This document shows positions 3,991 to 13,931 of a stretch of 64,000 bases of DNA, piece after piece (position 1 is the stretch's first letter; each line of letters begins with the position of its first letter). Below the pieces are notes generated by a model. The model had not been told where the DNA came from. It searched no databases and saw nothing but the letters and a program-made list of their open reading frames with translations. Position numbers and translations under genes: made by a program. Where the stretch lies: positions 310,001-374,000 of the IMG/VR virus record IMGVR_UViG_3300018080_008436. One strand, given 5' to 3'.

Positions 3991-4082
3991 TGGCGGAAGG
4001 AGAGGGATTTGAACCCTCGTGCCCCTTTCAGGACCAACCGCTTTCCAGGCGGTGACGATTAACCAGACTCCGTCATCCTTCC
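3991..4082 (-). tRNA. tRNA-Ser(GGA)
   Basis: Cloverleaf, loop CU-GGA-AA, long variable arm, G73, encoded CCA. Confidence 0.95.
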
Positions 4083-4088
4083 ATATTT

Positions 4089-4346
4089 TTATTTTTCATC
4101 TTGGGTTTTCGTTTCCCCTACTTTGATCAGATGTCTTGGGTTAACTAAAACAAGATAATTTTTAAGTACACAATATCCATTATCCAACATATACTCAATT
4201 TCATACATGGTGTTTATACTCATACTCCAAATACCTGCACCATGCCAGTCTTGATATTTTTGGGGGCGTTTAACAACATCCCCAATTTTCAAGCCGTTAG
4301 GATTGCAAACATCTGCCAGTTCAAGATCCGTTCTTTTCATCTTCAA
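4089..4346 (-). CDS. hypothetical protein
   Basis: 85 aa ORF in an overlapping gene chain. Confidence 0.6.
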   Translation of the reverse strand: MKMKRTDLELADVCNPNGLKIGDVVKRPQKYQDWHGAGIWSMSINTMYEIEYMLDNGYCVLKNYLVLVNPRHLIKVGETKTQDEK

Positions 4347-4599
4347 GTTCCTTGTTGATGAAATTCTTTAACACTGCATTGAACCCAATAGAGACAAGTT
4401 CTGAAAGCTCGTCCTCTGTTAAATCATGGGTTCTGACCCCCTCAATATTTTCTGATGCTTTTACAGCAACAACAGGAAGTCCACTCTCTTTTATTAAATC
4501 TTTTAGTGCAATAAGTATTAACGTATCGATCTCTCCTTCAGTAAGATCGATCTTAAATGGTTCGCCTGCTTCAAGTTTTTCTGGTTCAAGAATTTTCAT
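4321..4599 (-). CDS. hypothetical protein
   Basis: 92 aa acidic ORF, ATGA overlap. Confidence 0.7.
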   Translation of the reverse strand: MKILEPEKLEAGEPFKIDLTEGEIDTLILIALKDLIKESGLPVVAVKASENIEGVRTHDLTEDELSELVSIGFNAVLKNFINKELEDEKNGS

Positions 4600-4826
4600 C
4601 GTTTAATTACCTTCTCAGGCATTTCATCTCTTTTGTTCACAACCATGTACTTCCCATTGCCCTCAAAAATAACAGAAAGACCGCCATTTATTAGCTTAGC
4701 TGTTTCGCATTTGATCATTTCTGCCCCATCTTTTCTTTTGATCATCTCCCCAACATACTCTTCCTGTACTTTTTGATTGATAAAATCTGTTAGATTCATA
4801 TATCTACCTTTTATTTGGCTCTTCAA
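4596..4826 (-). CDS. hypothetical protein
   Basis: ORF track; start probably the internal MNL. Confidence 0.6.
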   Translation of the reverse strand: MKSQIKGRYMNLTDFINQKVQEEYVGEMIKRKDGAEMIKCETAKLINGGLSVIFEGNGKYMVVNKRDEMPEKVIKR

Positions 4827-5016
4827 TCACCATTATACAGCCAAGATTAGTATCAAAGTAACTAAGTCCATATTCTTCCAGAACTTCTAGGACCAGTTCC
4901 CTCATTTTAAGGGAATTTCCTGTAACAACCTCAAAAGGAGGGTCATAATTAAAAATATGAGAGTCAAGTAAAGACCGAACATCTTGATGCTTAACCCCAT
5001 GTAAATCTAACTTCAT
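4804..5016 (-). CDS. stand-alone Smr-domain protein
   Basis: MKLDLHG...VVTGNS...NLG motifs; ATG at 5016 overlaps the nadD TGA. Confidence 0.7.
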   Translation of the reverse strand: MKLDLHGVKHQDVRSLLDSHIFNYDPPFEVVTGNSLKMRELVLEVLEEYGLSYFDTNLGCIMVIEEPNKR

Positions 5017-5666
5017 TTTCCGTGTAACCAACCCTTCCGATTATGAGTCTCTTTCATTTGAACCTCTTCGGAAGGGACATAAAGACAGTGGTCCTGGATA
5101 TATCGTTGAACTTCTTCGTCCAAATATGGCAAAAAGTCTGATCTGCCATGTTTTTTGAAGTGATCTCTTGCCATAGTAGACGAACATTCGGTAATTTTGT
5201 CTTCTACGTCCAAGAAAAGATGGGGAGGATTCTTATACCATCGATATTTCTTCTTCAATTCGATTCCACTTCTTGTTACAACAACAAATTTGGCAATTTC
5301 CCGTAATTTTTTGAAATTATGCCAGTTAATGAAGTTGTTTACGTTGTCAGCACCAATGATAAAACTGATATCAACATCAAGTTGTGGGTCTTTGAGGAGG
5401 GTTTGGACTAATTCGAAGGTCGAACCACTCAGTTCATGTCTAATTTCGTAATCAAATACATGAAGTTTCGGATTTTTTCTGCAAGCGATAGCGCACATCC
5501 TGAGTCTGTGTAAATTAAGCTCTAAATTCTTACCAAATCGATGTTTATTGCAAGGCAAGAGCCAAACTTCATCAAATTTTCCTTTTTCAAGGACAAATTC
5601 AGCTACTTGTATATGAGCAAGTGTTGGGGGATTGAAAGCCCCGCCAAGAATGGCAATTTTAGTCAT
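5013..5666 (-). CDS. nadD: nicotinate/nicotinamide nucleotide adenylyltransferase
   Basis: ILGGAFNPPTLAH, FIIGADN...W, VVTR, SST.AR motifs; GGAG RBS before ATG 5666. Confidence 0.9.
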   Translation of the reverse strand: MTKIAILGGAFNPPTLAHIQVAEFVLEKGKFDEVWLLPCNKHRFGKNLELNLHRLRMCAIACRKNPKLHVFDYEIRHELSGSTFELVQTLLKDPQLDVDISFIIGADNVNNFINWHNFKKLREIAKFVVVTRSGIELKKKYRWYKNPPHLFLDVEDKITECSSTMARDHFKKHGRSDFLPYLDEEVQRYIQDHCLYVPSEEVQMKETHNRKGWLHGK

Positions 5667-5684
5667 AGTTTTCTCCAATGATTT

Positions 5685-5772
5685 TGGCGGAAGAGGTGGG
5701 ATTCGAACCCACGGATGCTCTCACATCAACGGTTTTCAAGACCGCCGCCTTCGACCTCTCAGCCACTCTTCC
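5685..5772 (-). tRNA. tRNA-Ser(UGA)
   Basis: Cloverleaf, loop CU-UGA-AA, long variable arm, GCCA end. Confidence 0.95.
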
Positions 5773-5778
5773 AAATTT

Positions 5779-5915
5779 TGATGGACAAGACGGGATTCGA
5801 ACCCGCAAATCGAGATGCCTCACCCATTGCTTAGGAGAAAAATAACTCCTGCCCATGGTAGCGACATTACTCTTAAGACCAGAGCCTCAACTTTGCCAAT
5901 TTAAGTTACTTGCCC
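5779..5915 (-). ncRNA. tRNA-like RNA with G3:U70/A73 acceptor and ~60 nt structured insert in the anticodon arm
   Basis: Acceptor GGGCAAG/CUUGUCC-A, D arm ACUU/AAGU, T arm GCGGG-UUCGAAU-CCCGU; ends UCA rather than CCA. Confidence 0.7.
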
Positions 5916-5929
5916 GTCTTGTCAAATTT

Positions 5930-6051
5930 TGGCGGATGAGGTAGGATTCGAACCTACACTGTAGCGGTTTCTGTTTTTTGGTTGCTGAAGAGAACCTTTT
6001 TGTCAAGTTCATTTTTTGGACCGCCGTCTCTGCCAGTTGGACTACTCATCC
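5930..6051 (-). tRNA. tRNA with ~45 nt insertion (possible intron) in the anticodon loop; identity uncertain, possibly Leu(CAG)
   Basis: Acceptor GGAUGAG/CUCAUCC-GCCA, D arm, stem GCGGU/ACCGC enclosing a ~52 nt loop ending CAGAA, intact T arm. Confidence 0.75.
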
Positions 6052-6062
6052 ATATTTATAGT

Positions 6063-6090
6063 AATATAGCCTTAAAATAAGAGATTGCAA
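6063..6090 (-). promoter_or_regulatory. sigma70-type promoter inside the tRNA region
   Basis: TTGCAA-N16-TATATT, 12 nt upstream of the 6051 tRNA 5' end. Confidence 0.6.
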
Positions 6091-6109
6091 GTTAAATATA
6101 AAGAAAAAT

Positions 6110-6196
6110 TGGAGGAAGATTGAGGGTTCGAACCCCATCCCTTTCGGAACCATCTGTTTTCGAAACAGTGACAGGAGCCATCCTGCATAATCTTCC
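6110..6196 (-). tRNA. tRNA-Ser(CGA), non-canonical 8/4 fold
   Basis: 8-bp acceptor GGAAGAUU/AAUCUUCC, 4-bp T stem, 6-bp D stem with 4-nt loop, loop UU-CGA-AA, U73-CCA. Confidence 0.85.
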
Positions 6197-6204
6197 ATAG
6201 AAAT

Positions 6205-6294
6205 TGGCGGAAGGGGAGGGATTCGAACCCTCGGACCCCTTGCGGGGTCGCAGGTTTAGCAAACCTGTACTTTCGGCCACTCAGTCACCCTTCC
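6205..6294 (-). tRNA. tRNA-Ser(GCU)
   Basis: Cloverleaf, loop UU-GCU-AA, long variable arm, GCCA. Confidence 0.95.
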
Positions 6295-6304
6295 ATAGGG
6301 GGCA

Positions 6305-7042
6305 TTATACCCCAAAAATCAATAATTCAAAATCGCCATTCTCATGTTCTACGATTGCAGAGCAATGCTCTACCCAATCTCCGCAGTTATAGTAGTCAAT
6401 CCCATCAATTTTTTTGATTATAGGAGAATGAACATGACCACATATAACTCCATCGCAATGATTCTCTTTGGCATACTCTGAAAGGAGACCTTCAAACTCT
6501 CCAACATAAGTAACAGCTTTTTTAAAATTTTCCCTGGCAAACTTTGATAAACGAACTCTTTTCACTCCGAACATCCTTAAACATCTTGCCAGGAACTCAT
6601 TCATTGAAACAAGAGTGTCATAACCCCAACTTCCAACCTTTGAGATCATGACTCCAATTCTTGAAAAAAGAATGAAATCAAACTTATCTCCATGAGTGAT
6701 GTAATACTTCTTTCCAAAACTGTGATAATATGTTTCTTTACAAATTTCCAGGTTCGGATAATGAAAACTGTCCAAAAGTTCCATCATACCATGATCATGA
6801 TTTCCTAAAACATAATGGACGTTACAGTGTTTTGACATTTTTAGAAGTCTTCTAATGACTTCTGTTTGGTTTTTATCCCATTTAGTTCTGTCTAATCTCC
6901 AAAGATCAAAGATATCTCCGATAAGATATAAATTGTCACATTCAGTCTCTTTTAGGAATTTAAGTAGTTCTTTAGATTTGCATCCAACACTGGCCATGTG
7001 GCAGTCTGAGATGAATACTGCTCGGTACTTAGTTTTACTCAT
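6305..7042 (-). CDS. calcineurin-like metallophosphoesterase, UDP-2,3-diacylglucosamine hydrolase (LpxH-like) family
   Basis: ISDCH, GDIFD, GNHD, HGD, GHVH, NCGDW motifs; AGGAGG RBS before ATG 7042. Confidence 0.85.
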   Translation of the reverse strand: MSKTKYRAVFISDCHMASVGCKSKELLKFLKETECDNLYLIGDIFDLWRLDRTKWDKNQTEVIRRLLKMSKHCNVHYVLGNHDHGMMELLDSFHYPNLEICKETYYHSFGKKYYITHGDKFDFILFSRIGVMISKVGSWGYDTLVSMNEFLARCLRMFGVKRVRLSKFARENFKKAVTYVGEFEGLLSEYAKENHCDGVICGHVHSPIIKKIDGIDYYNCGDWVEHCSAIVEHENGDFELLIFGV

Positions 7043-7130
7043 ATTTTTCCTCCTATAAGTAGTAAGGAATAATACTGAGAAAACAGGATAAAACCTACTC
7101 AATAATGAGTTGTTAACCAAGTATTAATAT

Positions 7131-7221
7131 TGGCAGAGGGAGTGGGACTCGAACCCACAAACCGCATTTCTACAGCTTACATGATTTCAAATCAAGCTCT
7201 TCATCCAGCCAGATTCCCTCC
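7131..7221 (-). tRNA. tRNA-Ser(UGA) with degenerate D arm
   Basis: Acceptor GGAGGGA/UCCCUCU-GCCA, loop UU-UGA-AA, long variable arm. Confidence 0.8.
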
Positions 7222-7227
7222 ATTGAT

Positions 7228-7313
7228 TGGTAGCTAGGAGGGGGGTCGAACCCCTACGCCTTTCGGCATTAGTTTCTAAGACTAACATGTCTACCAAGTT
7301 CCATCACCTAGCC
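7228..7313 (-). tRNA. tRNA-Leu(UAG)
   Basis: Loop CU-UAG-AA, variable arm GCC-GAAA-GGC, ACCA end. Confidence 0.95.
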
Positions 7314-7318
7314 ATCTT

Positions 7319-7395
7319 TGGTAGCCTCGCTGGGAGTCGAACCCAGAACATACAGTTTCTAAGACTGCCCTCTCTGCCAATTGGAGTACGAGACC
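7319..7395 (-). tRNA. tRNA-Leu(UAG), short variable loop
   Basis: 77 nt cloverleaf, loop CU-UAG-AA, ACCA end. Confidence 0.9.
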
Positions 7396-7403
7396 ATTAA
7401 ATT

Positions 7404-7489
7404 TGGCGGAAGGTAGGAGATTCGAACTCCTATGCCCGTGAGGACGACAGTTTAGCAAACTGCTGGCTTACCATTCGCCACAACCTTCC
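7404..7489 (-). tRNA. tRNA-Ser(GCU)
   Basis: Loop UU-GCU-AA, long variable arm, GCCA. Confidence 0.92.
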
Positions 7490-7491
7490 AT

Positions 7492-7578
7492 TGGTAGCCA
7501 GGGAGGGCCTCGAACCCTCACTCCCTTTCGGGAACTGGATTTTGAATCCAGCGCGTCTGCCAATTTCACCACCTGGCC
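7492..7578 (-). tRNA. tRNA-Leu(CAA)
   Basis: Loop UU-CAA-AA, long variable arm, ACCA. Confidence 0.95.
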
Positions 7579-7589
7579 AATAAATTTAA

Positions 7590-7657
7590 TGGAGCTAATG
7601 AGATTCGAACTCATCCCCCTGCCTCTATGGGCAGTTCGGCTACCGTCTAGTAACCCC
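7590..7657 (-). ncRNA. 68-nt tRNA-like RNA with G3:U70/A73 acceptor and 6-nt anticodon-position loop
   Basis: GGGGUUA/UAGCUCC-A acceptor, CUGCC-CAUAGA-GGCAG, AUGAG-UUCGAAU-CUCAU; no CCA. Confidence 0.65.
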
Positions 7658-7689
7658 AATTGGTTGCGTATAAACATATAAACAATATT

Positions 7690-7777
7690 TGGTAGTCTCG
7701 GGGAGATTCGAACTCCCACCTCCTTCGCGGAGACAACGACCTCAACGTTGCGTGTCTGCCAGTTCCACCACGAGACC
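7690..7777 (-). tRNA. tRNA-Leu(GAG)
   Basis: Loop UU-GAG-GU, long variable arm, ACCA. Confidence 0.95.
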
Positions 7778-7824
7778 ATTATAAGTGGCCATAACTGACG
7801 AATTAACCCCAGTTTTGGCCGTTT

Positions 7825-7844
7825 ATTCGTAATATATTACGAAT
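7825..7844. repeat. 20-bp perfect palindrome in a tRNA spacer
   Basis: ATTCGTAATATATTACGAAT. Confidence 0.8.
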
Positions 7845-7847
7845 TAT

Positions 7848-7923
7848 TGGTAGCCCTGGTCGGATTCGAACCGACACTTTACGGATTTTAAGTCCGCTCC
7901 CTCTGCCGTTGGAGTACAGGGCC
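7848..7923 (-). tRNA. tRNA-Leu(UAA), short variable loop
   Basis: 76 nt, loop CU-UAA-AA, ACCA. Confidence 0.9.
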
Positions 7924-7928
7924 ATTTT

Positions 7929-7990
7929 TAACTGTTTTTCTCGTTATAGTGGAAAATATAACTGTTTTTCCAGTTTTGTAACTGTTTTTC
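7929..7990. repeat. three 12-bp direct repeats
   Basis: TAACTGTTTTTC at 7929, 7959, 7979. Confidence 0.85.
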
Positions 7991-7998
7991 CAGTAAAA

Positions 7999-8090
7999 TG
8001 GTGAGCAGGGAGGGATTCGAACCCCCAATGTTTACCCAAAGGGGACAGATTTACAGTCTGCCGCAACACCACCATCGTTGCCGCCTACCC
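7999..8090 (-). tRNA. tRNA-Tyr(GUA), extended D stem
   Basis: Loop CU-GUA-AA, G1:C72, long variable region, ACCA. Confidence 0.9.
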
Positions 8091-8094
8091 ATTT

Positions 8095-8182
8095 TGGTCC
8101 TGGTGGTAGGTAACGATCCTACTTGATGCGCAATGATGATAGTTTTACAGACTACCCCGTCTCCTTAACGGTCTACACCAGG
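8095..8182 (-). tRNA. tRNA-Tyr(GUA) with C1:G72 and atypical T loop
   Basis: CCUGGUG/CACCAGG-ACCA, loop CU-GUA-AA, T loop AUCGUUA. Confidence 0.85.
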
Positions 8183-8184
8183 AT

Positions 8185-8206
8185 AAAAAGGTGACTTAAG
8201 TCACCT
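8185..8206 (-). terminator. terminator-like or processing hairpin inside the array
   Basis: AGGTGAC-TTAA-GTCACCT followed by TTTT. Confidence 0.45.
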
Positions 8207-8293
8207 AATGCCTCTGGGTCAGACTTACCAATACCGTCATATTGGGTCCGATAGCCCAGTAAGGACTTTAAGCGTCTGGTTTTCCCCAGACCC

Positions 8294-8381
8294 TGGAGCG
8301 CGGTGAGGGATTCGAACCCTCGCGGACATAAGTCCCATCAGTTTTGCAGACTGTGCCATTAAACCACTCTGGCAACCGCGC
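8294..8381 (-). tRNA. tRNA-Cys(GCA) with long variable arm
   Basis: Loop CU-GCA-AA, U73-CCA, variable hairpin GGAC-UUAU-GUCC. Confidence 0.88.
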
Positions 8382-8387
8382 ATATTA

Positions 8388-8458
8388 AGCACGATGTCGG
8401 AATCGAACCGACTTCTGCGGGTTTGCAATCCGCCGCCTCACCATCTGGCTCATCGTGC
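8388..8458 (-). tRNA. tRNA-Cys(GCA), no encoded CCA
   Basis: GCACGAU/AUCGUGC-U, loop UU-GCA-AA. Confidence 0.88.
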
Positions 8459-8566: not shown

Positions 8567-8586
8567 TTGGCTATCAATTAAGCCAT

Positions 8587-8619
8587 AAAAAAACCCCGTT
8601 CGGAAAACCGAACGGGGTT
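8587..8619 (-). terminator. attenuator terminator upstream of the tRNA array
   Basis: 12-bp stem AACCCCGTTCGG-TTTT-CCGAACGGGGTT followed by T run. Confidence 0.9.
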
Positions 8620-8637
8620 GAAAACCGAGTTAAGAAC

Positions 8638-8715
8638 TTACGTTCTCTGGACGCACAACCCCGTCCATCTCAAACTGAGATATGATGAACATAGGCTGAG
8701 CGATAAAGATTTCAT
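8638..8715 (-). CDS. leader peptide MKSLSLSLCSSYLSLRWTGLCVQRT (putative attenuator)
   Basis: ATG 8715, TAA 8640-8638, AGGA RBS; codons 3-15 only Ser/Leu/Cys/Tyr; contains antiterminator strand GGACGGGGTTG. Confidence 0.85.
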   Translation of the reverse strand: MKSLSLSLCSSYLSLRWTGLCVQRT

Positions 8716-8754
8716 TATAAGTTCTTTCCTGTTAAAAATTCAAATTACAACCCT

Positions 8755-8782
8755 ATTATAAACTGGATCTGAAGCTTTTCAA
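8755..8782 (-). promoter_or_regulatory. sigma70-type promoter for the leader and tRNA array
   Basis: TTGAAA-N16-TATAAT. Confidence 0.75.
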
Positions 8783-9084: not shown

Positions 9085-9339
9085 TTATGGGCCAACCCAA
9101 ATAATTCCAATGTTTTTACCAACAGTTACTTTTAATTTAACCATATTATTGCCGATTGCAACGATTCTGTTGAATTTGTAGGTAATAATCTCTCTGGCTT
9201 GGATCATGGAGTTACATACGCCTGTTGAAACGGTAAAACAGGTATCAGGACATTCTATGCTTGCTTGAATGCCACGGGGATGAATATTCTCAAATATTAT
9301 GTGAGCTTCTTCTCCACAAACTGGGCATTTCATACTCAT
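9085..9339 (-). CDS. small Zn-finger protein, Lar-like
   Basis: CPVCG...CPDTC. Confidence 0.5.
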   Translation of the reverse strand: MSMKCPVCGEEAHIIFENIHPRGIQASIECPDTCFTVSTGVCNSMIQAREIITYKFNRIVAIGNNMVKLKVTVGKNIGIIWVGP

Positions 9340-9344
9340 GGCAC

Positions 9345-9459
9345 AAAAAAAGTGCGATACATCTCAACATCAACAACTCGAAATAATCGTACAGGCCGCT
9401 AAACCTAACAACTACGCCCCATGGTAGCTAGAATCGCCAACGTTAAAACATACCGCACT
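9345..9459 (-). ncRNA. orphan structured RNA, 29-bp G-U-rich stem with branched head
   Basis: Uninterrupted 29-bp helix (18 Watson-Crick + 11 G-U) only on the minus strand, followed by U7. Confidence 0.75.
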
Positions 9460-9463
9460 AAAG

Positions 9464-10063
9464 CTATTTTATCTTACCTTTCATGATTTTCTTGGCGATA
9501 TCCAAAATATTCTCGTCAATGGGGAATACATCTTTTTTCTGGTCGATCTGACCAAGATGATCTTCAAGTTCATCACTTTCGAACTCATCATCTTCAGGAA
9601 TTACTCCAAAATGCTCTGGAAGAAGTTTCCTTAACAAATCAGTGCTAATCATAATATCCATGTTTTCCAACACAGAGATAATTATGGCATCAATGAACCC
9701 TACTCTACTGATCGCATCAATAATTCCGTCTGAAACTGACGACAACATGATATTAACGTTGATTACTTCATCCCCTATTTCAGGATCATAATGCAAGTCA
9801 ATATAAATACCGCTCAAGAATCGGTCTCCAGCCCTCCAAGTATTTACCATAGTTTTGTATACTTCTACCATATTTGGTGCGTGTGGGTCATCTTCGTTCA
9901 CTTCCAAAACATAATTAATGGATTGGGCAACTTCATCAGATACTGGGAAAAACAATATGCAATTGTTCTGAATCTCTGAAGCTAAAGGCAATACGAGTCC
10001 CCCAGAACTATCTTCGTTGATCTGTGATTGATCAACGCATGGCATTACGTGGAATCTGTTCAT
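9464..10063 (-). CDS. hypothetical protein, weak resemblance to bifunctional nuclease (DUF151)
   Basis: Spacing of GIYID...IDAII...IMI...LL; acidic tail. Confidence 0.45.
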   Translation of the reverse strand: MNRFHVMPCVDQSQINEDSSGGLVLPLASEIQNNCILFFPVSDEVAQSINYVLEVNEDDPHAPNMVEVYKTMVNTWRAGDRFLSGIYIDLHYDPEIGDEVINVNIMLSSVSDGIIDAISRVGFIDAIIISVLENMDIMISTDLLRKLLPEHFGVIPEDDEFESDELEDHLGQIDQKKDVFPIDENILDIAKKIMKGKIK

Positions 10064-10353: not shown

Positions 10354-10610
10354 ATGATATCCAAAGTGTTTTGGGTTCTTTTGGCGACAGTTCCGTATTT
10401 GGAACCGTATCGAGTGGCAGAGAAACGATAATAATCTTTAATCTTCTGCTGATAATCTTCGTCAAAAGAATTGATGTCAACCCTACCTTCTAACACATTA
10501 ACTGCATCAATTCGGAGTTGTTGGACATCGGGAGGAACCCCAAGTACATCATCACCTATCTGCTCAGGCCCAATAGGTTCTTGGGGATACAGTTGATTTT
10601 GATTCGCCAT
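10350..10610 (-). CDS. hypothetical protein
   Basis: 86 aa, GAGG RBS. Confidence 0.65.
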
Positions 10611-11622
10611 ATGCCTCTCTCAAAGCTTTTACCAAGCCTTCCCTTTTATCTTTACCAATATACTTCGAGGGAATCTGAGGCAATACCTTCACAAAAATAG
10701 TCCCACCATTCAAGAAGTCAACTTTGATCTCATAGAATTTTTCAGTGTCCCAATCTGACTTTAGTTGAAACGTGACATCCTTCTTCTTGAACAGTTTAAC
10801 GGTAATGTTTTCTTCAGCTAAAATCTTATCAATTGTAACTTGAACAGATAGAAAAAGATCCGATCCTTTCTGAACAACCCCATCTTGCTCAGAAGGATAA
10901 TTAACAACAACGTAATGAGACCCAGTATAAGTAGAGTCATCCGACTGATAAATCGTATTTCCCTTGTCTTTGAGTCTCATACTGGCATTATGATTGATGT
11001 TTGGGGGGATCTGTATTCTCGTTTTTGAACGAGTTTGCATGTAGCCAACTCCTTTGCATTTCTCGCAAGGCTTGAATCTTTTTCCACTTCCACCACAGGC
11101 TCCACAAATGTTTATATATTGGAACCCAGGTTGATTTACGTGTTGTTGCCCTTGACCATTACAAGTAGGGCAAACAATTTCTTTTCCAAGAAATGCCCCA
11201 GTTGTTTTGCAAGCATCGCAAGCAACAACCTGTTGTATAGTGTGGTTTTTCTTACAACCAAATATCGCTTCTGCTAGAGTAATGCTAATAGATGATCTCG
11301 AATCTGGATTGATCCGTTTTCTGGAAGGCTGATTGCTTCGTTGTCCCCCAAAGAAGTCTTTGAAAACACTCCAAGTTCTTGAAGTCCCAGAATGCGGATG
11401 TGGTTGTTGATTTCCTATCGTACCAAACCTGTCATATTGAGCTTTCTTTTGGGCATCCGAAAGGACTTCGTAAGCTAAAGAGATCTCTTTAAACTTCTCT
11501 TCTTTTGCCTCATCGCCAGCATTTTTATCAGGATGGTATTCCTTAGCTAATTTTCGATAAGCTTTCTTAATCTCATCCTGTGAAGCTTCTCGCCCCACCC
11601 CTAATACTTCATATGGATTCAT
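10564..11622 (-). CDS. dnaJ: DnaJ chaperone
   Basis: J domain with HPD, four CxxCxGxG-type repeats, C-terminal domain. Confidence 0.92.
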
Positions 11623-13931
11623 CTGGAACGCTTTCTCTTTCTTTTTCTAATGACAATGTCGCCACTTTTATCAGCAGTTATAGTCAGAGTATAACTGTAC
11701 TGATCGATATCCTCAATTTCAAGGATTGTGTCTGCAACAAGTGGCTCAACTTGTTTTGAAATAATTCGATCAAGTGACATGGCATTCATACCATGTTCAG
11801 AGTCATGATATTTAACAATAGCTTCAGCTATCTTCGCCCCAATCTTAATACTAATGTATTTGTGATTAACGCGCTGAGCGAATTCTGTAAGTCTCATTTC
11901 TACAATGTCTTGAAGATTCTCTTTCGTCAGTTCCACAAATGGTACGAAGGCATCGACACGATTAACGAATTCTTCACCATAAGATTTCTTACAGAAGTCA
12001 ATTAAACGAGTTCTCTCATTTTCCACAAGGCTTTTTTTACCTTTTGAATTAAAACCCATGGAAGCTGACTTAGAAATATTCAAACCGAAGTTACCTGTCA
12101 TGATGAAGAAGATATTTTTGCAGTCAACCTTTTCACCTACTGCACTAGTAATGGTTCCTTCTGACATAACTTGTAAAAACAGCCTCATGACTTGTGGATG
12201 AGCTTTCTCAATTTCATCGAGCAGTAGGATGCAATAAGGTCTTCTTTTGATTTTGTCAACTACAACATCAACATCCTTGAAACCCACATATCCTGGTGGA
12301 CTCCCAATTATTTTGCTAATTGAGTGTTTTTCAGAGTATTCTGACATATCAATCTTAATCAGATTTTTCTCGCTTCCAAAAATTGCTTGAGATAACTGTT
12401 TGGCGGTATAAGTTTTCCCTGTTCCACTTTGCCCTCCAAAAGTAAGAACTCCAATGGGTCTGTCAGGGTTTCTAACTCCGCTATAAGCATTTCTAAGTAC
12501 CCTACAAACGCTTGTAACGGCTTCTTCTTGTCCAATTACTCTTTTCTTCAGAAATTCCTCAGTCTTTTTAATTCTTTCATGTGTATCCCACATGATAACT
12601 TCTAAAGGAACTCCGCATTGTTTACTGATGACTTTGGCAACATCATCTGAGGTAATTATGGGAGTGTGTTCGTCATTTTCCGACCAAGCGTTTTGAGCAC
12701 ATGCAGTATCCATACAGTCAATTGCTTTATCTGGGAAGTATTTGGTTGGTCTGTATCGTTTGGTCAGATTGATAATGGAGTCAATAGCATCGTTTGAGAT
12801 CGTGCATTCATGATACTTTTCAAAACGATCTTTGATTCCCATCAAGATTTTTTTGACATCTTCATCTGATGGTTCATCAATATTGACAACTCCAAAGCGT
12901 CTTGATAATGCCCCATCGTCAACAAAATGTTTTTTATATTCTTGATGAGTTGTGGCCCCAATACACTTCAACTTCCTTGCAAGAGCAGGTTTAAGAATGT
13001 TTGCGGCATCCATAGCGGAGCCAGCACCTCCTGCACCTACAATCGTATGAATTTCATCAATAAACAGAATGACATCTGGATCATCTTCAACGGCCTTGAT
13101 TAGATCCTGTATCCTTTTTTCAAAATCTCCACGATATTTTGTCCCTGCAACCATTCCTGCCATATTGAGGGAATAAATCCTACACCCTCTGAGTTTGGGA
13201 GGGACAGCATTACTGATGATTCTTTGAGCGATGCCCTCAACAATAGCAGTCTTCCCGACTCCAGCTTCACCAACTAAAATTGGATTTGATTTTGTTCTTC
13301 TGCAAAGGATTGTAATTGTTTCTTCGATTTCTGAATCTCTTGAAATTATCGGATCAAATTCTCCGTTGTTTGCCAACTCTGTCATATCAGTGCAGTATTG
13401 GTCAATAATAGAGTCTTTGGTCTTTTTCTTCGAACTTCTTGAAGTTTTAACTGTGCTTTTGTGAGATTTGCTACTTAAGATCTCTTCAATGCAACTCTTG
13501 AACTCCTTGCATTCTTTGGAAATGATTCTCTTAAGATTCAGGTGAAGATCCATGATAGATATGAACAGATGTCCAAGTCCAACGATTTTGTGGCCATTAT
13601 CGCGAGATAACTTATCTGCCGCTTTGCACACTTCAACGATTTCTTTTGAAATATTAATTTCGTCAAAGGTAACCCCAGAGTCCCCACTCTCATTTTCCTT
13701 TTGTCTATTGGAAAGGAGTCTCTTAAACTTCTTAACGCAAGTGTCTAAATCAACTCCATGCTCGTGCAACGCTAATGTTACAACGTTTTCTCCAGTGAGC
13801 AATGTTCCAATCAAGAATGACTCTGGATATAGGCAATCCACATGAGCATCAATACTTGCGGCTTTAGCAAATACGATCATGTGTAGAACATCGTTACTAA
13901 ACCTGTCATACATCTTCTGGTTTTCTGACAT
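11619..13931 (-). CDS. ClpA/ClpC-family AAA+ ATPase
   Basis: Clp N domain, [46 protein letters not shown]. Confidence 0.93.

What the first reader, a model, noticed from the sequence alone, without database searches (positions are those of the whole stretch)
9345..9459. Orphan ncRNA: 29-bp helix in which all 11 non-Watson-Crick positions are G-U
Seen: minus-strand AGUGCGGUAUGUUUUAACGUUGGCGAUUC pairs without interruption with GAGUUGUUGAUGUUGAGAUGUAUCGCACU. It encloses two small hairpins (UAGCUAC/GUAGUUG; UAGGUU/GGCCUG) and is followed by U7. The arms differ at 11 of 29 DNA positions, always in the G-U-compatible direction, which argues for selection on RNA structure rather than a DNA inverted repeat. 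It is far larger than needed for a terminator and I cannot assign a family.
Basis: seen in the sequence. Interest (0 to 1): 0.65.

Follow-up and report, generated by a model that had tools for sequence, protein, structure and literature searches.

The report
Conserved branched RNA in huge phages
The long G-U-rich hairpin is real and belongs to a previously unclassified structured RNA, conserved in a group of uncultured huge phages: a roughly 30-bp stalk that ends like a terminator carries an almost invariant three-way-junction head whose loop holds a six-base self-complementary sequence.

Summary
Minus strand 9459..9351 forms 29 uninterrupted pairs (18 Watson-Crick, 11 G-U) followed by U7. No other stem in the 476-kb phage genome exceeds 18 bp, which is the level reached in shuffled genomes. 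Only the minus-strand RNA folds well (-47.5 kcal/mol, z -4.9, against -16.8, z -0.35).

The same element follows the same gene in 16 distinct metagenomic relatives and one distant one. That gene encodes a 199-aa protein with a DUF151/BFN fold and sits at the end of a ClpB-like/DnaJ block. A Cys-Tyr-Leu-Ser tRNA array follows in 11 of the 15 related loci scanned and in the distant relative.

Covariation is strong: 21 of 45 pairs change on both sides and 94% of cells pair. The outer 16 bp vary freely but stay paired. The inner helix, the junction and two hairpins are more conserved (81%) than the adjacent coding sequence (62%), and ten G-U wobbles never vary. The loop of hairpin P1 is always a 6-nt palindrome (CCAUGG, CCUAGG or UCUAGA).

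No Rfam family matches. The phage has no Ro, RNase III or reverse transcriptase gene, no second copy and no repeated core motif.

Best reading: a terminator-embedded RNA whose head is a specific recognition and probably self-pairing module. Its function is unknown, and no expression data exist.

The parts
9345..9459 (-). Whole element: closing helix, three-way junction with hairpins P1 and P2, and U-run (115 nt)
   Evidence: The covariance model R1 scores it at 128.6 bits.
9444..9459 (-). Outer stalk, 5' strand (16 nt); pairs with 9351..9366
   Evidence: Fourteen of 16 pairs change on both sides among homologues. Sequence identity is only 52%, yet 88% of cells pair. The foot next to the U-run is GC-rich.
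9431..9443 (-). Inner conserved helix, 5' strand; pairs with 9367..9379
   Evidence: Thirteen pairs. Five never vary and three change on both sides. The G-U wobble positions are almost fixed: G-U or U-G in 14-15 of 15-16 informative sequences at each of five pairs.
9416..9428 (-). Hairpin P1: 3-bp stem and 7-nt loop
   Evidence: The third stem pair covaries (GC 6, UG 5, UA 2). The MFE fold shows it.
9419..9424 (-). 6-nt palindrome CCAUGG in the P1 loop
   Evidence: It is always self-complementary: CCAUGG, CCUAGG or UCUAGA in all 16 distinct sequences, and UCUAGA in the distant relative L151. All 48 cells are complementary, two of three positions change on both sides, and 0 of 500 shuffles match. 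On the protein tree the types are interspersed.
9383..9415 (-). Hairpin P2: 14 bp with one bulge and a UAGC loop (9398..9401)
   Evidence: Of the 13 P2 pairs in the consensus model, ten never vary, five of them G-U wobbles, and three change on both sides; all cells pair. The 10-nt stretch GUUUAGCGGC is invariant and occurs once in the genome.
9351..9379 (-). 3' strand of the closing helix (inner part 9367..9379, outer part 9351..9366)
9345..9351 (-). U7 tract directly after the helix
   Evidence: Read in the sequence. A U-rich tract follows the helix within 0-8 nt in every complete homologue (L022 is cut off before its 3' end).
9464..10063 (-). Upstream gene, 199 aa, DUF151/BFN-fold protein; the element begins 4 nt after its stop codon
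   Evidence: Pfam finds no family. The AlphaFold2 model has pLDDT 76.6. Foldseek matches TM0160 (1sj5, 1vjl) at E 2e-5, probability 1.0. Nineteen homologues were found, and the gene precedes the element in every locus where the upstream region could be read.
9085..9339 (-). Downstream ORF (84 aa, weak Lar-like zinc ribbon); not a conserved neighbour
   Evidence: The genes downstream of the element differ between loci.

Best explanation
The element is a clade-specific, previously unclassified structured RNA read from the minus strand. It is most likely made as the 3' end of the mRNA of the upstream DUF151/BFN-fold gene, and it has two functional layers.

(1) The stalk. This is a closing helix of 28-33 bp. 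Its outer half is free to change in sequence, and its GC-rich foot abuts a U-tract. It would zip up from the pre-folded head as the 3' strand emerges from the polymerase. I infer that it acts as an intrinsic terminator and as a shield for the 3' end. Being dsRNA longer than about 22 bp, it is also a plausible entry site for a host RNase III, which would release the head as an RNA of about 75-80 nt; this last step is speculative.

(2) The head. It consists of a 13-bp inner helix, a three-way junction, hairpin P1 and hairpin P2, and it is the sequence-specific part. The inner helix stacked on P2 would form a duplex with two-fold symmetry, because both strands read CGAUU...AGUUGUU, and its G-U wobbles are fixed. 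That suits a dimeric binding partner (inferred). The P1 loop presents a 6-nt self-complementary sequence that stays self-complementary when it changes. I read that as loop-loop (kissing) pairing between two copies of the RNA (inferred).

Shown: the structure, its conservation, the strand, the genomic position and the absence of any known family. Inferred: termination, dimerisation, a partner and processing. The biological role is unknown. The candidates are a stable trans-acting RNA or RNP of the phage, or an autoregulatory site for the upstream protein.
For: The helix is the longest in the genome by 11 bp, and only the minus strand folds.

The same architecture sits at the same place in every relative recovered, including one whose flanking protein is only 37% identical.

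Covariation is strong: 45 pairs, 94.2% of cells paired, 21 pairs with changes on both sides, 0 of 500 shuffles as good, and slid controls giving 5-10 pairs.

The head is 81% identical between homologues, against 52% for the stalk and 62.5% for the last 300 nt of the upstream CDS.

The closing helix is 28-33 bp in all copies, and a U-rich tail always follows.

The P1 palindrome is fully self-complementary through changes on both sides. Its three types are interspersed on the protein tree, and the duplex energies are -5.2 to -8.0 kcal/mol.

The head alone folds into the same junction, with no competing fold within 5 kcal/mol.

The core motifs occur once in the genome, so this is not a repeated promoter or operator, and there is no second copy.
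Against: No RNA data exist. No RNA run holds this sequence, so transcription, the RNA ends, termination and processing are all untested.

The family is shallow, with 16 distinct sequences and one distant member. Part of the core conservation could be shared ancestry.

The palindrome has only three states. The protein tree that spreads them is weakly resolved (4 of 8 inner branches are left unresolved) and omits four loci whose protein my script failed to extract.

No partner protein is identified. DUF151 proteins are reported both as nucleases in vitro (PMC7249048) and as interactors of the Clp chaperone CLPC1 (PMC8889267). The upstream protein may therefore belong to the chaperone block and have nothing to do with the RNA.

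The alignment used for the pair counts was fitted to the model and so leans towards the structure. The unfitted MAFFT alignment nevertheless gave 20 of 45 covarying pairs.
Confidence: 0.5

Rival explanations
1. It is only an unusually long, branched intrinsic terminator and mRNA 3' stabiliser for the upstream gene; the head has no function of its own.
For: The stalk has a GC-rich foot followed directly by a U-tract in all copies. The element starts 0-4 nt after the stop codon. No conserved promoter precedes it: the -10-like TAAAAT is merely the Ile-Lys-stop codons, and the Ile codon varies between ATA, ATC and ATT.
Against: Ordinary terminators in this genome are short 7-12-bp hairpins, and no other stem exceeds 18 bp. 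The loops and junction are more conserved than the coding sequence next door. Ten G-U wobbles never drift to Watson-Crick pairs, although such drift is common in the stalk. The P1 loop keeps its palindromy through changes on both sides. Termination needs none of this.
Confidence: 0.2
2. Its main role is as an RNase III processing signal of the T7 early-mRNA type. It would separate the chaperone-block mRNA from downstream transcripts and leave a protective hairpin.
For: It contains 28-33 bp of dsRNA, more than the roughly 22 bp RNase III needs (established knowledge). The stack of inner helix and P2 is two-fold symmetric, with a junction in the position that an internal loop occupies in T7 sites (read from the sequences). 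It lies at the boundary between a protein-coding block and a tRNA array.
Against: RNase III sites are conserved in shape, not in loop sequence; here a 10-nt loop region and a palindromic loop are fixed. No RNase III gene is found in the phage, and the host is unknown. A U-tract would not be needed.
Confidence: 0.15
3. It is a cis-regulator of downstream genes: a riboswitch, attenuator or RNA thermometer.
For: It lies upstream of small ORFs and the tRNA array, it ends in a terminator-like structure, and G-U-rich helices are typical of thermometers.
Against: The gene immediately downstream differs between loci and lies 125 to about 1,360 nt away. No alternative fold exists within 5 kcal/mol, and a 29-bp closing helix is too stable to switch. 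No ribosome-binding site is sequestered.
Confidence: 0.05
4. It is a Y-RNA-like, decoy or sponge RNA that binds a host RNA-binding protein or nuclease.
For: It has a long 5'/3' stem, a conserved head and a 3' oligo-U, as in Y RNAs. It lies beside tRNA genes, and the phage encodes RtcB.
Against: The phage has no TROVE/Ro gene. Rfam gives no Y RNA or YrlA match even at E up to 10. The stalk lacks a conserved bulged Ro-binding helix and varies freely.
Confidence: 0.07
5. It is a DNA-level element: a protein-binding inverted repeat, a replication origin, or a recombination or restriction-related palindrome.
For: It is an inverted repeat in DNA. The P1 palindromes are also classic 6-bp DNA palindromes, and CCTAGG is strongly avoided in this genome (1 found, about 63 expected).
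Against: All non-Watson-Crick positions are G-U on one strand only, in every homologue. The opposite strand loses more than half of the folding energy. Compensatory changes preserve RNA pairs, including interchange of G-U with A-U and G-C. A DNA-binding protein would not tolerate three different palindromes. The core motifs are not repeated elsewhere.
Confidence: 0.03

Closest known systems
Intrinsic (Rho-independent) terminators and 3'-UTR-derived small RNAs
   Same: A GC-rich helix foot is followed at once by a U-tract. The element sits directly after a stop codon and on the same strand as the gene.
   Different: The stem is 28-33 bp instead of about 5-14 bp and closes a three-way junction. 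The head is sequence-conserved across phages whose flanking proteins are only 37-58% identical.
Phage T7 RNase III processing sites (R1.1 type) and rRNA processing stalks
   Same: A long dsRNA is formed by flanking sequences, with approximate two-fold symmetry around a central interruption. The stalk is variable while what it encloses is conserved.
   Different: There is a branched junction instead of an internal loop, the loop sequences are invariant, a U-tract is present, and cleavage has not been tested.
Kissing-loop dimerisation hairpins (HIV-1 DIS; ColE1 RNA I/RNA II 7-nt loops)
   Same: A 6-nt self-complementary sequence is displayed in a small hairpin loop and changes only to other palindromes.
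   Different: The context is a bacteriophage, the stem is only 3 bp, and no dimer has been demonstrated. There is no homology.
phi29 packaging RNA (pRNA)
   Same: It is a phage RNA of about 115-120 nt with a 5'/3' closing helix, a three-way junction and loops suited to pairing between molecules.
   Different: pRNA uses two different complementary loops to form a ring and belongs to small phi29-like phages. Here there is one palindromic loop and a helix about 30 bp long, and no Rfam family, pRNA included, matched at E up to 10.
Y RNAs / bacterial YrlA
   Same: It has a long terminal stem and a conserved internal module, is about 110 nt long, ends in U residues and lies near tRNA-related genes.
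   Different: No Ro (TROVE) protein gene is present, there is no tRNA-like T-arm or D-arm, and Rfam gives no match.
Phage T4 stable RNAs species 1 and 2 (rnaC, rnaD) beside the tRNA cluster (recalled from memory, not tested)
   Same: They are small stable phage RNAs of unknown function encoded next to the phage tRNA array.
   Different: No sequence similarity was detected to anything in the phage collection beyond a tRNA-Tyr gene. The structures were not compared.

Membership tests
Any Rfam 15 family | Covariance-model score at or above the family's gathering threshold | tested here: not met
   There is no hit on the element at gathering thresholds in the window. The best sub-threshold hits are plant miRNA precursor models at 15 bits against 119 needed, E = 2.9. 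No match overlaps the element in four homologous loci at E up to 0.5.
Intrinsic terminator | GC-rich stem immediately followed by a U-tract on the transcribed strand | tested here: met
   Here the foot AGUGCGG/UCGCACU is followed by U7. A GC-rich foot and a U-rich tail are present in all homologues.
Intrinsic terminator | Simple hairpin of about 5-14 bp with a small loop | tested here: not met
   A helix of 28-33 bp closes a three-way junction. The pattern scan for terminators did not list it.
Intrinsic terminator | RNA 3' ends generated at the U-tract | not testable with these tools
   No RNA sequencing run holds this sequence.
Y RNA / YrlA | Ro60/Rsr (TROVE) protein encoded in the genome, usually adjacent | tested here: not met
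   PF05731 is absent from the 476-kb genome, while the control genomes were detected.
Y RNA / YrlA | Conserved bulged Ro-binding helix in the terminal stem, with a tRNA-like module | tested here: not met
   The outer stem varies freely. No Y_RNA, YrlA or tRNA model hits the element.
Retron msr-msd RNA | Adjacent reverse transcriptase | tested here: not met
   RVT_1 (PF00078) was not found in the genome.
RNase III processing site | At least about 20-22 bp of dsRNA | tested here: met
   There are 29 bp here and 28-33 bp in homologues.
RNase III processing site | Staggered cleavage by RNase III | not testable with these tools
   The phage has no RNase III gene, the host is unknown and there are no RNA data.
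Kissing-loop dimerisation element | Self-complementary hexamer exposed in a hairpin loop and kept self-complementary in evolution | tested here: met
   CCAUGG, CCUAGG and UCUAGA are the only types. All 48 cells are complementary, two of three positions change on both sides, and 0 of 500 shuffles match. The distant member L151 has UCUAGA.
Kissing-loop dimerisation element | Physical RNA dimer that depends on the loop | not testable with these tools
   Only thermodynamic estimates are available: hexamer duplexes of -5.2 to -8.0 kcal/mol, and a two-molecule fold 14 kcal/mol below two monomers.
phi29 pRNA | Two distinct mutually complementary loops, phi29-type phage, Rfam pRNA model | tested here: not met
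   There is one palindromic loop only, the phage is 476 kb, and no Rfam family matched at E up to 10.

The most novel reading that the evidence does not exclude
The head is a self-assembling RNA module. Two copies, or more, would join through the palindromic P1 loops into a symmetric RNA-only or RNA-protein particle made by a clade of huge phages. The two-fold symmetric helices with fixed G-U wobbles would bind a dimeric partner. The RNA would be released from the end of the chaperone-gene mRNA by cleavage in the variable stalk. That would be a new class of phage quaternary-structure RNA encoded next to a tRNA array, as the large ROOL and GOLLD RNAs often are.
Probability: 0.25. Interest if true: 0.8.

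Novelty: new variant of a known kind. Interest (0 to 1): 0.6.

Why it matters
Huge phages carry many translation- and proteostasis-related genes, but their non-coding RNAs are almost unstudied. This element is a clean case backed by covariation. Its head is more conserved than the neighbouring protein gene, its wobble pairs are fixed, and one loop changes only between palindromes.

If the RNA dimerises or recruits a dimeric protein, it would be a compact and tractable model of about 115 nt for RNA quaternary structure in phages. It would also be a new handle on how these phages organise expression at the boundary between their chaperone block and their tRNA array. If it proves to be only an ornate terminator, it would still show how far terminator hairpins can be elaborated. 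The covariance model can be used at once to annotate related metagenomic phages.

Tried and rejected
- **Local folding of the whole genome.** ViennaRNA local folding of both strands timed out twice. I replaced it with my own exact stem scan.
- **Genome-contig scan.** I used a pattern with only 16 specified bases, which was a poor choice. It returned at least 120 hits in unrelated bacteria; the bases flanking them match the element no better than chance, about the number expected by chance by my own estimate.
- **Phage collection.** There was no near match, and the distant search hit only a tRNA-Tyr gene.
- **IMG/VR.** It holds only an identical copy (L002/L015/L150) and one distant relative, L151.
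- **RNA evidence.** Only three DNA metagenome runs hold the region and no RNA run does.
- **Upstream protein.** Pfam and PDB sequence searches gave nothing. Only the fold search identified DUF151/BFN.
- **Own promoter.** The -10-like TAAAAT before the helix is the Ile-Lys-stop codons, and its second base varies, so I dropped the idea.
- **Bistable switch.** The repeated CGAUU/AGUUG segments suggested an alternative fold, but none lies within 5 kcal/mol.
- **Repeated promoter or operator.** The core motifs occur once in the genome.
- **Hidden small ORF.** Fixed TAG triplets close all three sense frames, and CTA/TTA triplets close the antisense frames (read from the sequence).
- **Published catalogue.** The catalogue of about 10,000 phage RNA candidates (PMC10690425) could not be checked, because its alignments are not held.

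Full report
**Where the window lies**

The window is bases 310,001-374,000 of a 476,248-bp IMG/VR virus record with 39% G+C, estimated 98% complete. All genes around the finding run on the minus strand. In the direction of transcription they are:
- a ClpB-like AAA+ protein (13931..11619) and a DnaJ (11622..10564);
- two small ORFs;
- a 199-aa ORF (10063..9464);
- the element (9459..9345);
- two small ORFs, and a short GC-rich terminator (8619..8592);
- an array of 14 tRNA genes for Cys, Tyr, Leu and Ser only (8458..3991).

**Check of the observation**

The minus-strand RNA pairs exactly as described. There are 29 consecutive pairs, 18 Watson-Crick and 11 G-U, followed by seven U, the first of which is the last paired base.

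The minimum-energy fold is -47.5 kcal/mol (z = -4.9, none of 200 shuffles as good). The complementary strand reaches only -16.8 kcal/mol (z = -0.35).

An exhaustive scan of both strands of the whole genome for uninterrupted stems within about 150 nt ranks this helix first at 29 bp. The next is 18 bp, and shuffled genomes reach 17-18 bp. The helix is therefore neither chance nor the usual terminator style of this phage.

**Homologues**

Nothing similar is in the phage collection, and IMG/VR holds only an identical copy.

The upstream 199-aa protein has about 19 metagenomic relatives at 38-58% identity. In every contig whose DNA could be fetched, the gene order ClpB-like / DnaJ / small ORFs / 199-aa homologue is kept where the contig reaches that far. 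A non-coding gap follows, and it folds into the same shape.

A pattern taken from the invariant core recovered 11 more metagenome contigs. This gives 16 distinct sequences, one of them (L022) cut off at its 3' end. They come from marine, sediment and saline samples.

A profile search with the protein family found one distant relative, L151, at 37% protein identity. Its element scores only 18 bits. It still has a long closing helix, a P1 loop with UCUAGA, a P2 base GUAGUUG/CGAUUA, a UUUAGC apical loop and a run of six U.

A tRNA array beginning with Cys and Tyr follows in 11 of the 15 related loci scanned and in L151; the four without are short contigs or contig ends.

**Anatomy and covariation**

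The consensus has four helices.

- *Helix 1, the outer stalk (16 bp).* Fourteen of its 16 pairs change on both sides, and it has no sequence conservation (52% identity).
- *Helix 2, the inner helix (13 bp).* It is nearly invariant and includes five G-U wobbles that hardly vary. Three of its pairs covary, which confirms that it is a helix.
- *P1.* A 3-bp stem whose third pair covaries, with a 7-nt loop.
- *P2.* Thirteen pairs: ten never vary, five of them G-U, and three covary. It is capped by UAGC within the invariant GUUUAGCGGC.

Overall 94.2% of cells pair and 21 of 45 pairs change on both sides. None of 500 column shuffles reaches any of the five measures, and sliding the partners by 1-3 columns gives 5-10 such pairs. 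The unfitted MAFFT alignment already gave 20 of 45.

The head is 81% identical between homologues. That is more than the last 300 nt of the upstream coding sequence (62.5%) and far more than the stalk.

The closing helix is 28-33 bp in every member, usually with one or two single-base interruptions. The window's copy is the only uninterrupted one.

About one third of all pairs are G-U in every member. The sense strand folds at -41 to -51 kcal/mol against -13 to -29 for the antisense.

**The palindromic loop**

The P1 loop always contains a six-base self-complementary sequence: CCAUGG, CCUAGG or UCUAGA. Treated as self-pairs, all 48 cells are complementary, two of the three positions show changes on both sides, and no shuffle matches.

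On a tree of the flanking proteins, CCAUGG and CCUAGG are interspersed and UCUAGA forms one clade. With L151 this implies at least three compensatory switches, although the tree is weakly resolved and four loci were left out after a failed extraction.

A hexamer cannot pair with itself inside a 7-nt loop. The simplest reading is pairing between two RNA molecules. The duplex energies are -5.2 to -8.0 kcal/mol, and a two-molecule fold lies 14 kcal/mol below two monomers.

**A second symmetry**

Read from the sequences, both strands of the stack formed by the inner helix and P2 read CGAUU...AGUUGUU. The stacked duplex is therefore two-fold symmetric about the junction. This does not produce a competing fold: the head alone gives the same junction, with nothing else within 5 kcal/mol.

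**What it is not**

- No Rfam family matches this copy or its homologues.
- The phage has no Ro/TROVE, RNase III or reverse transcriptase gene. An RtcB gene lies 120 kb away.
- There is no second copy, and the core motifs are unique in the genome, so it is not a repeated promoter or operator.
- Stop triplets close all six frames.
- The -10-like TAAAAT just upstream is the Ile-Lys-stop codons, with a varying Ile codon, so no promoter of its own is evident.
- The bacterial hits from a pattern scan that was too short are chance.

**The upstream protein**

Pfam and PDB sequence searches are blank. An AlphaFold2 model (pLDDT 76.6) matches the DUF151/BFN protein TM0160 with probability 1.0.

Plant DUF151 proteins cut RNA and DNA in vitro (PMC7249048). 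DUF151-UVR proteins are also enriched interactors of the Clp chaperone CLPC1 (PMC8889267). This protein could therefore either belong to the chaperone block or handle the RNA. I did not test any binding.

**Interpretation**

I read the element as a terminator-embedded structured RNA at the 3' end of the DUF151-gene transcript. The variable stalk, with its GC-rich foot and U-tract, supplies termination and 3' protection, and it is a plausible RNase III entry point. The conserved head is a specific recognition module that probably pairs with a second copy through P1 and may bind a dimeric partner.

The structure, conservation, strand and context are shown. Termination, dimerisation, processing and any partner are inferred. 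No expression data exist.

The rivals are a pure terminator, a pure RNase III signal, a cis-regulator, a Y-RNA-like decoy and a DNA element. They are weighed in their own sections. The DNA reading is the weakest, because the G-U asymmetry and the compensatory changes are RNA-specific.

**Verdict**

The feature is real and strongly supported by covariation. It belongs to no described family and is specific to a small clade of uncultured huge phages. Its parts resemble known kinds: a terminator, a processing stalk and a kissing loop. The combination, and the conserved head, are new. Interest is moderate to high. The function remains open.

Noticed in passing
window 8294-8381 (- strand); also L004:6228-6316, L006:5708-5793, L010:5311-5395: There is a tRNA with the Cys anticodon GCA that is 85-89 nt long and has a long variable arm (class-II shape). 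In the window it lies beside a normal 71-nt tRNA-Cys (8388-8458). Which amino acid it carries is unclear.
   Followed up: no
window 3991-8458 (- strand) and the matching parts of L004-L028 and L151: The tRNA array downstream of the element holds only Cys, Tyr, Leu and Ser genes. It starts with Cys and then Tyr in 9 of the 12 loci where an array was found, counting L151.
   Followed up: partly
window 5782-5915 and 5933-6051 (- strand): Rfam reports full-length tRNA matches spanning 134 and 119 nt that ARAGORN does not call. They may be tRNA genes with an insertion or intron, or decayed copies.
   Followed up: no
window 8585-8782 (- strand): Two strong sigma-70-like promoter matches (11/12 and 10/12) are followed about 100-150 nt later by a perfect 12-bp GC-rich terminator, just before tRNA-Cys. 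This may be a short transcript or a leader of the tRNA operon.
   Followed up: no
whole genome G000: CCTAGG occurs once where about 63 copies are expected, and CTAG occurs at half its expected frequency, while CCATGG is not avoided. This hints at restriction pressure from the unknown host.
   Followed up: no
window 9464-10063 (- strand): The 199-aa protein has a DUF151/BFN fold that Pfam misses. It is conserved at the end of a ClpB-like/DnaJ gene block in this phage clade.
   Followed up: partly
L012:1-1435: The ClpB-like gene of one relative is 1,143 aa long and has a weak LAGLIDADG endonuclease hit. This suggests an intein insertion.
   Followed up: no
G000:C1:198526-199671: The phage encodes an RtcB RNA ligase (224 bits), far from the element.
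   Followed up: no
G000 record as a whole: IMG/VR labels the 476-kb record a provirus, although the identical metagenome contig (Ga0180433_10000003) is 524,692 bp. The trimmed ends might reveal the host, or the trimming may be an artefact.
   Followed up: no
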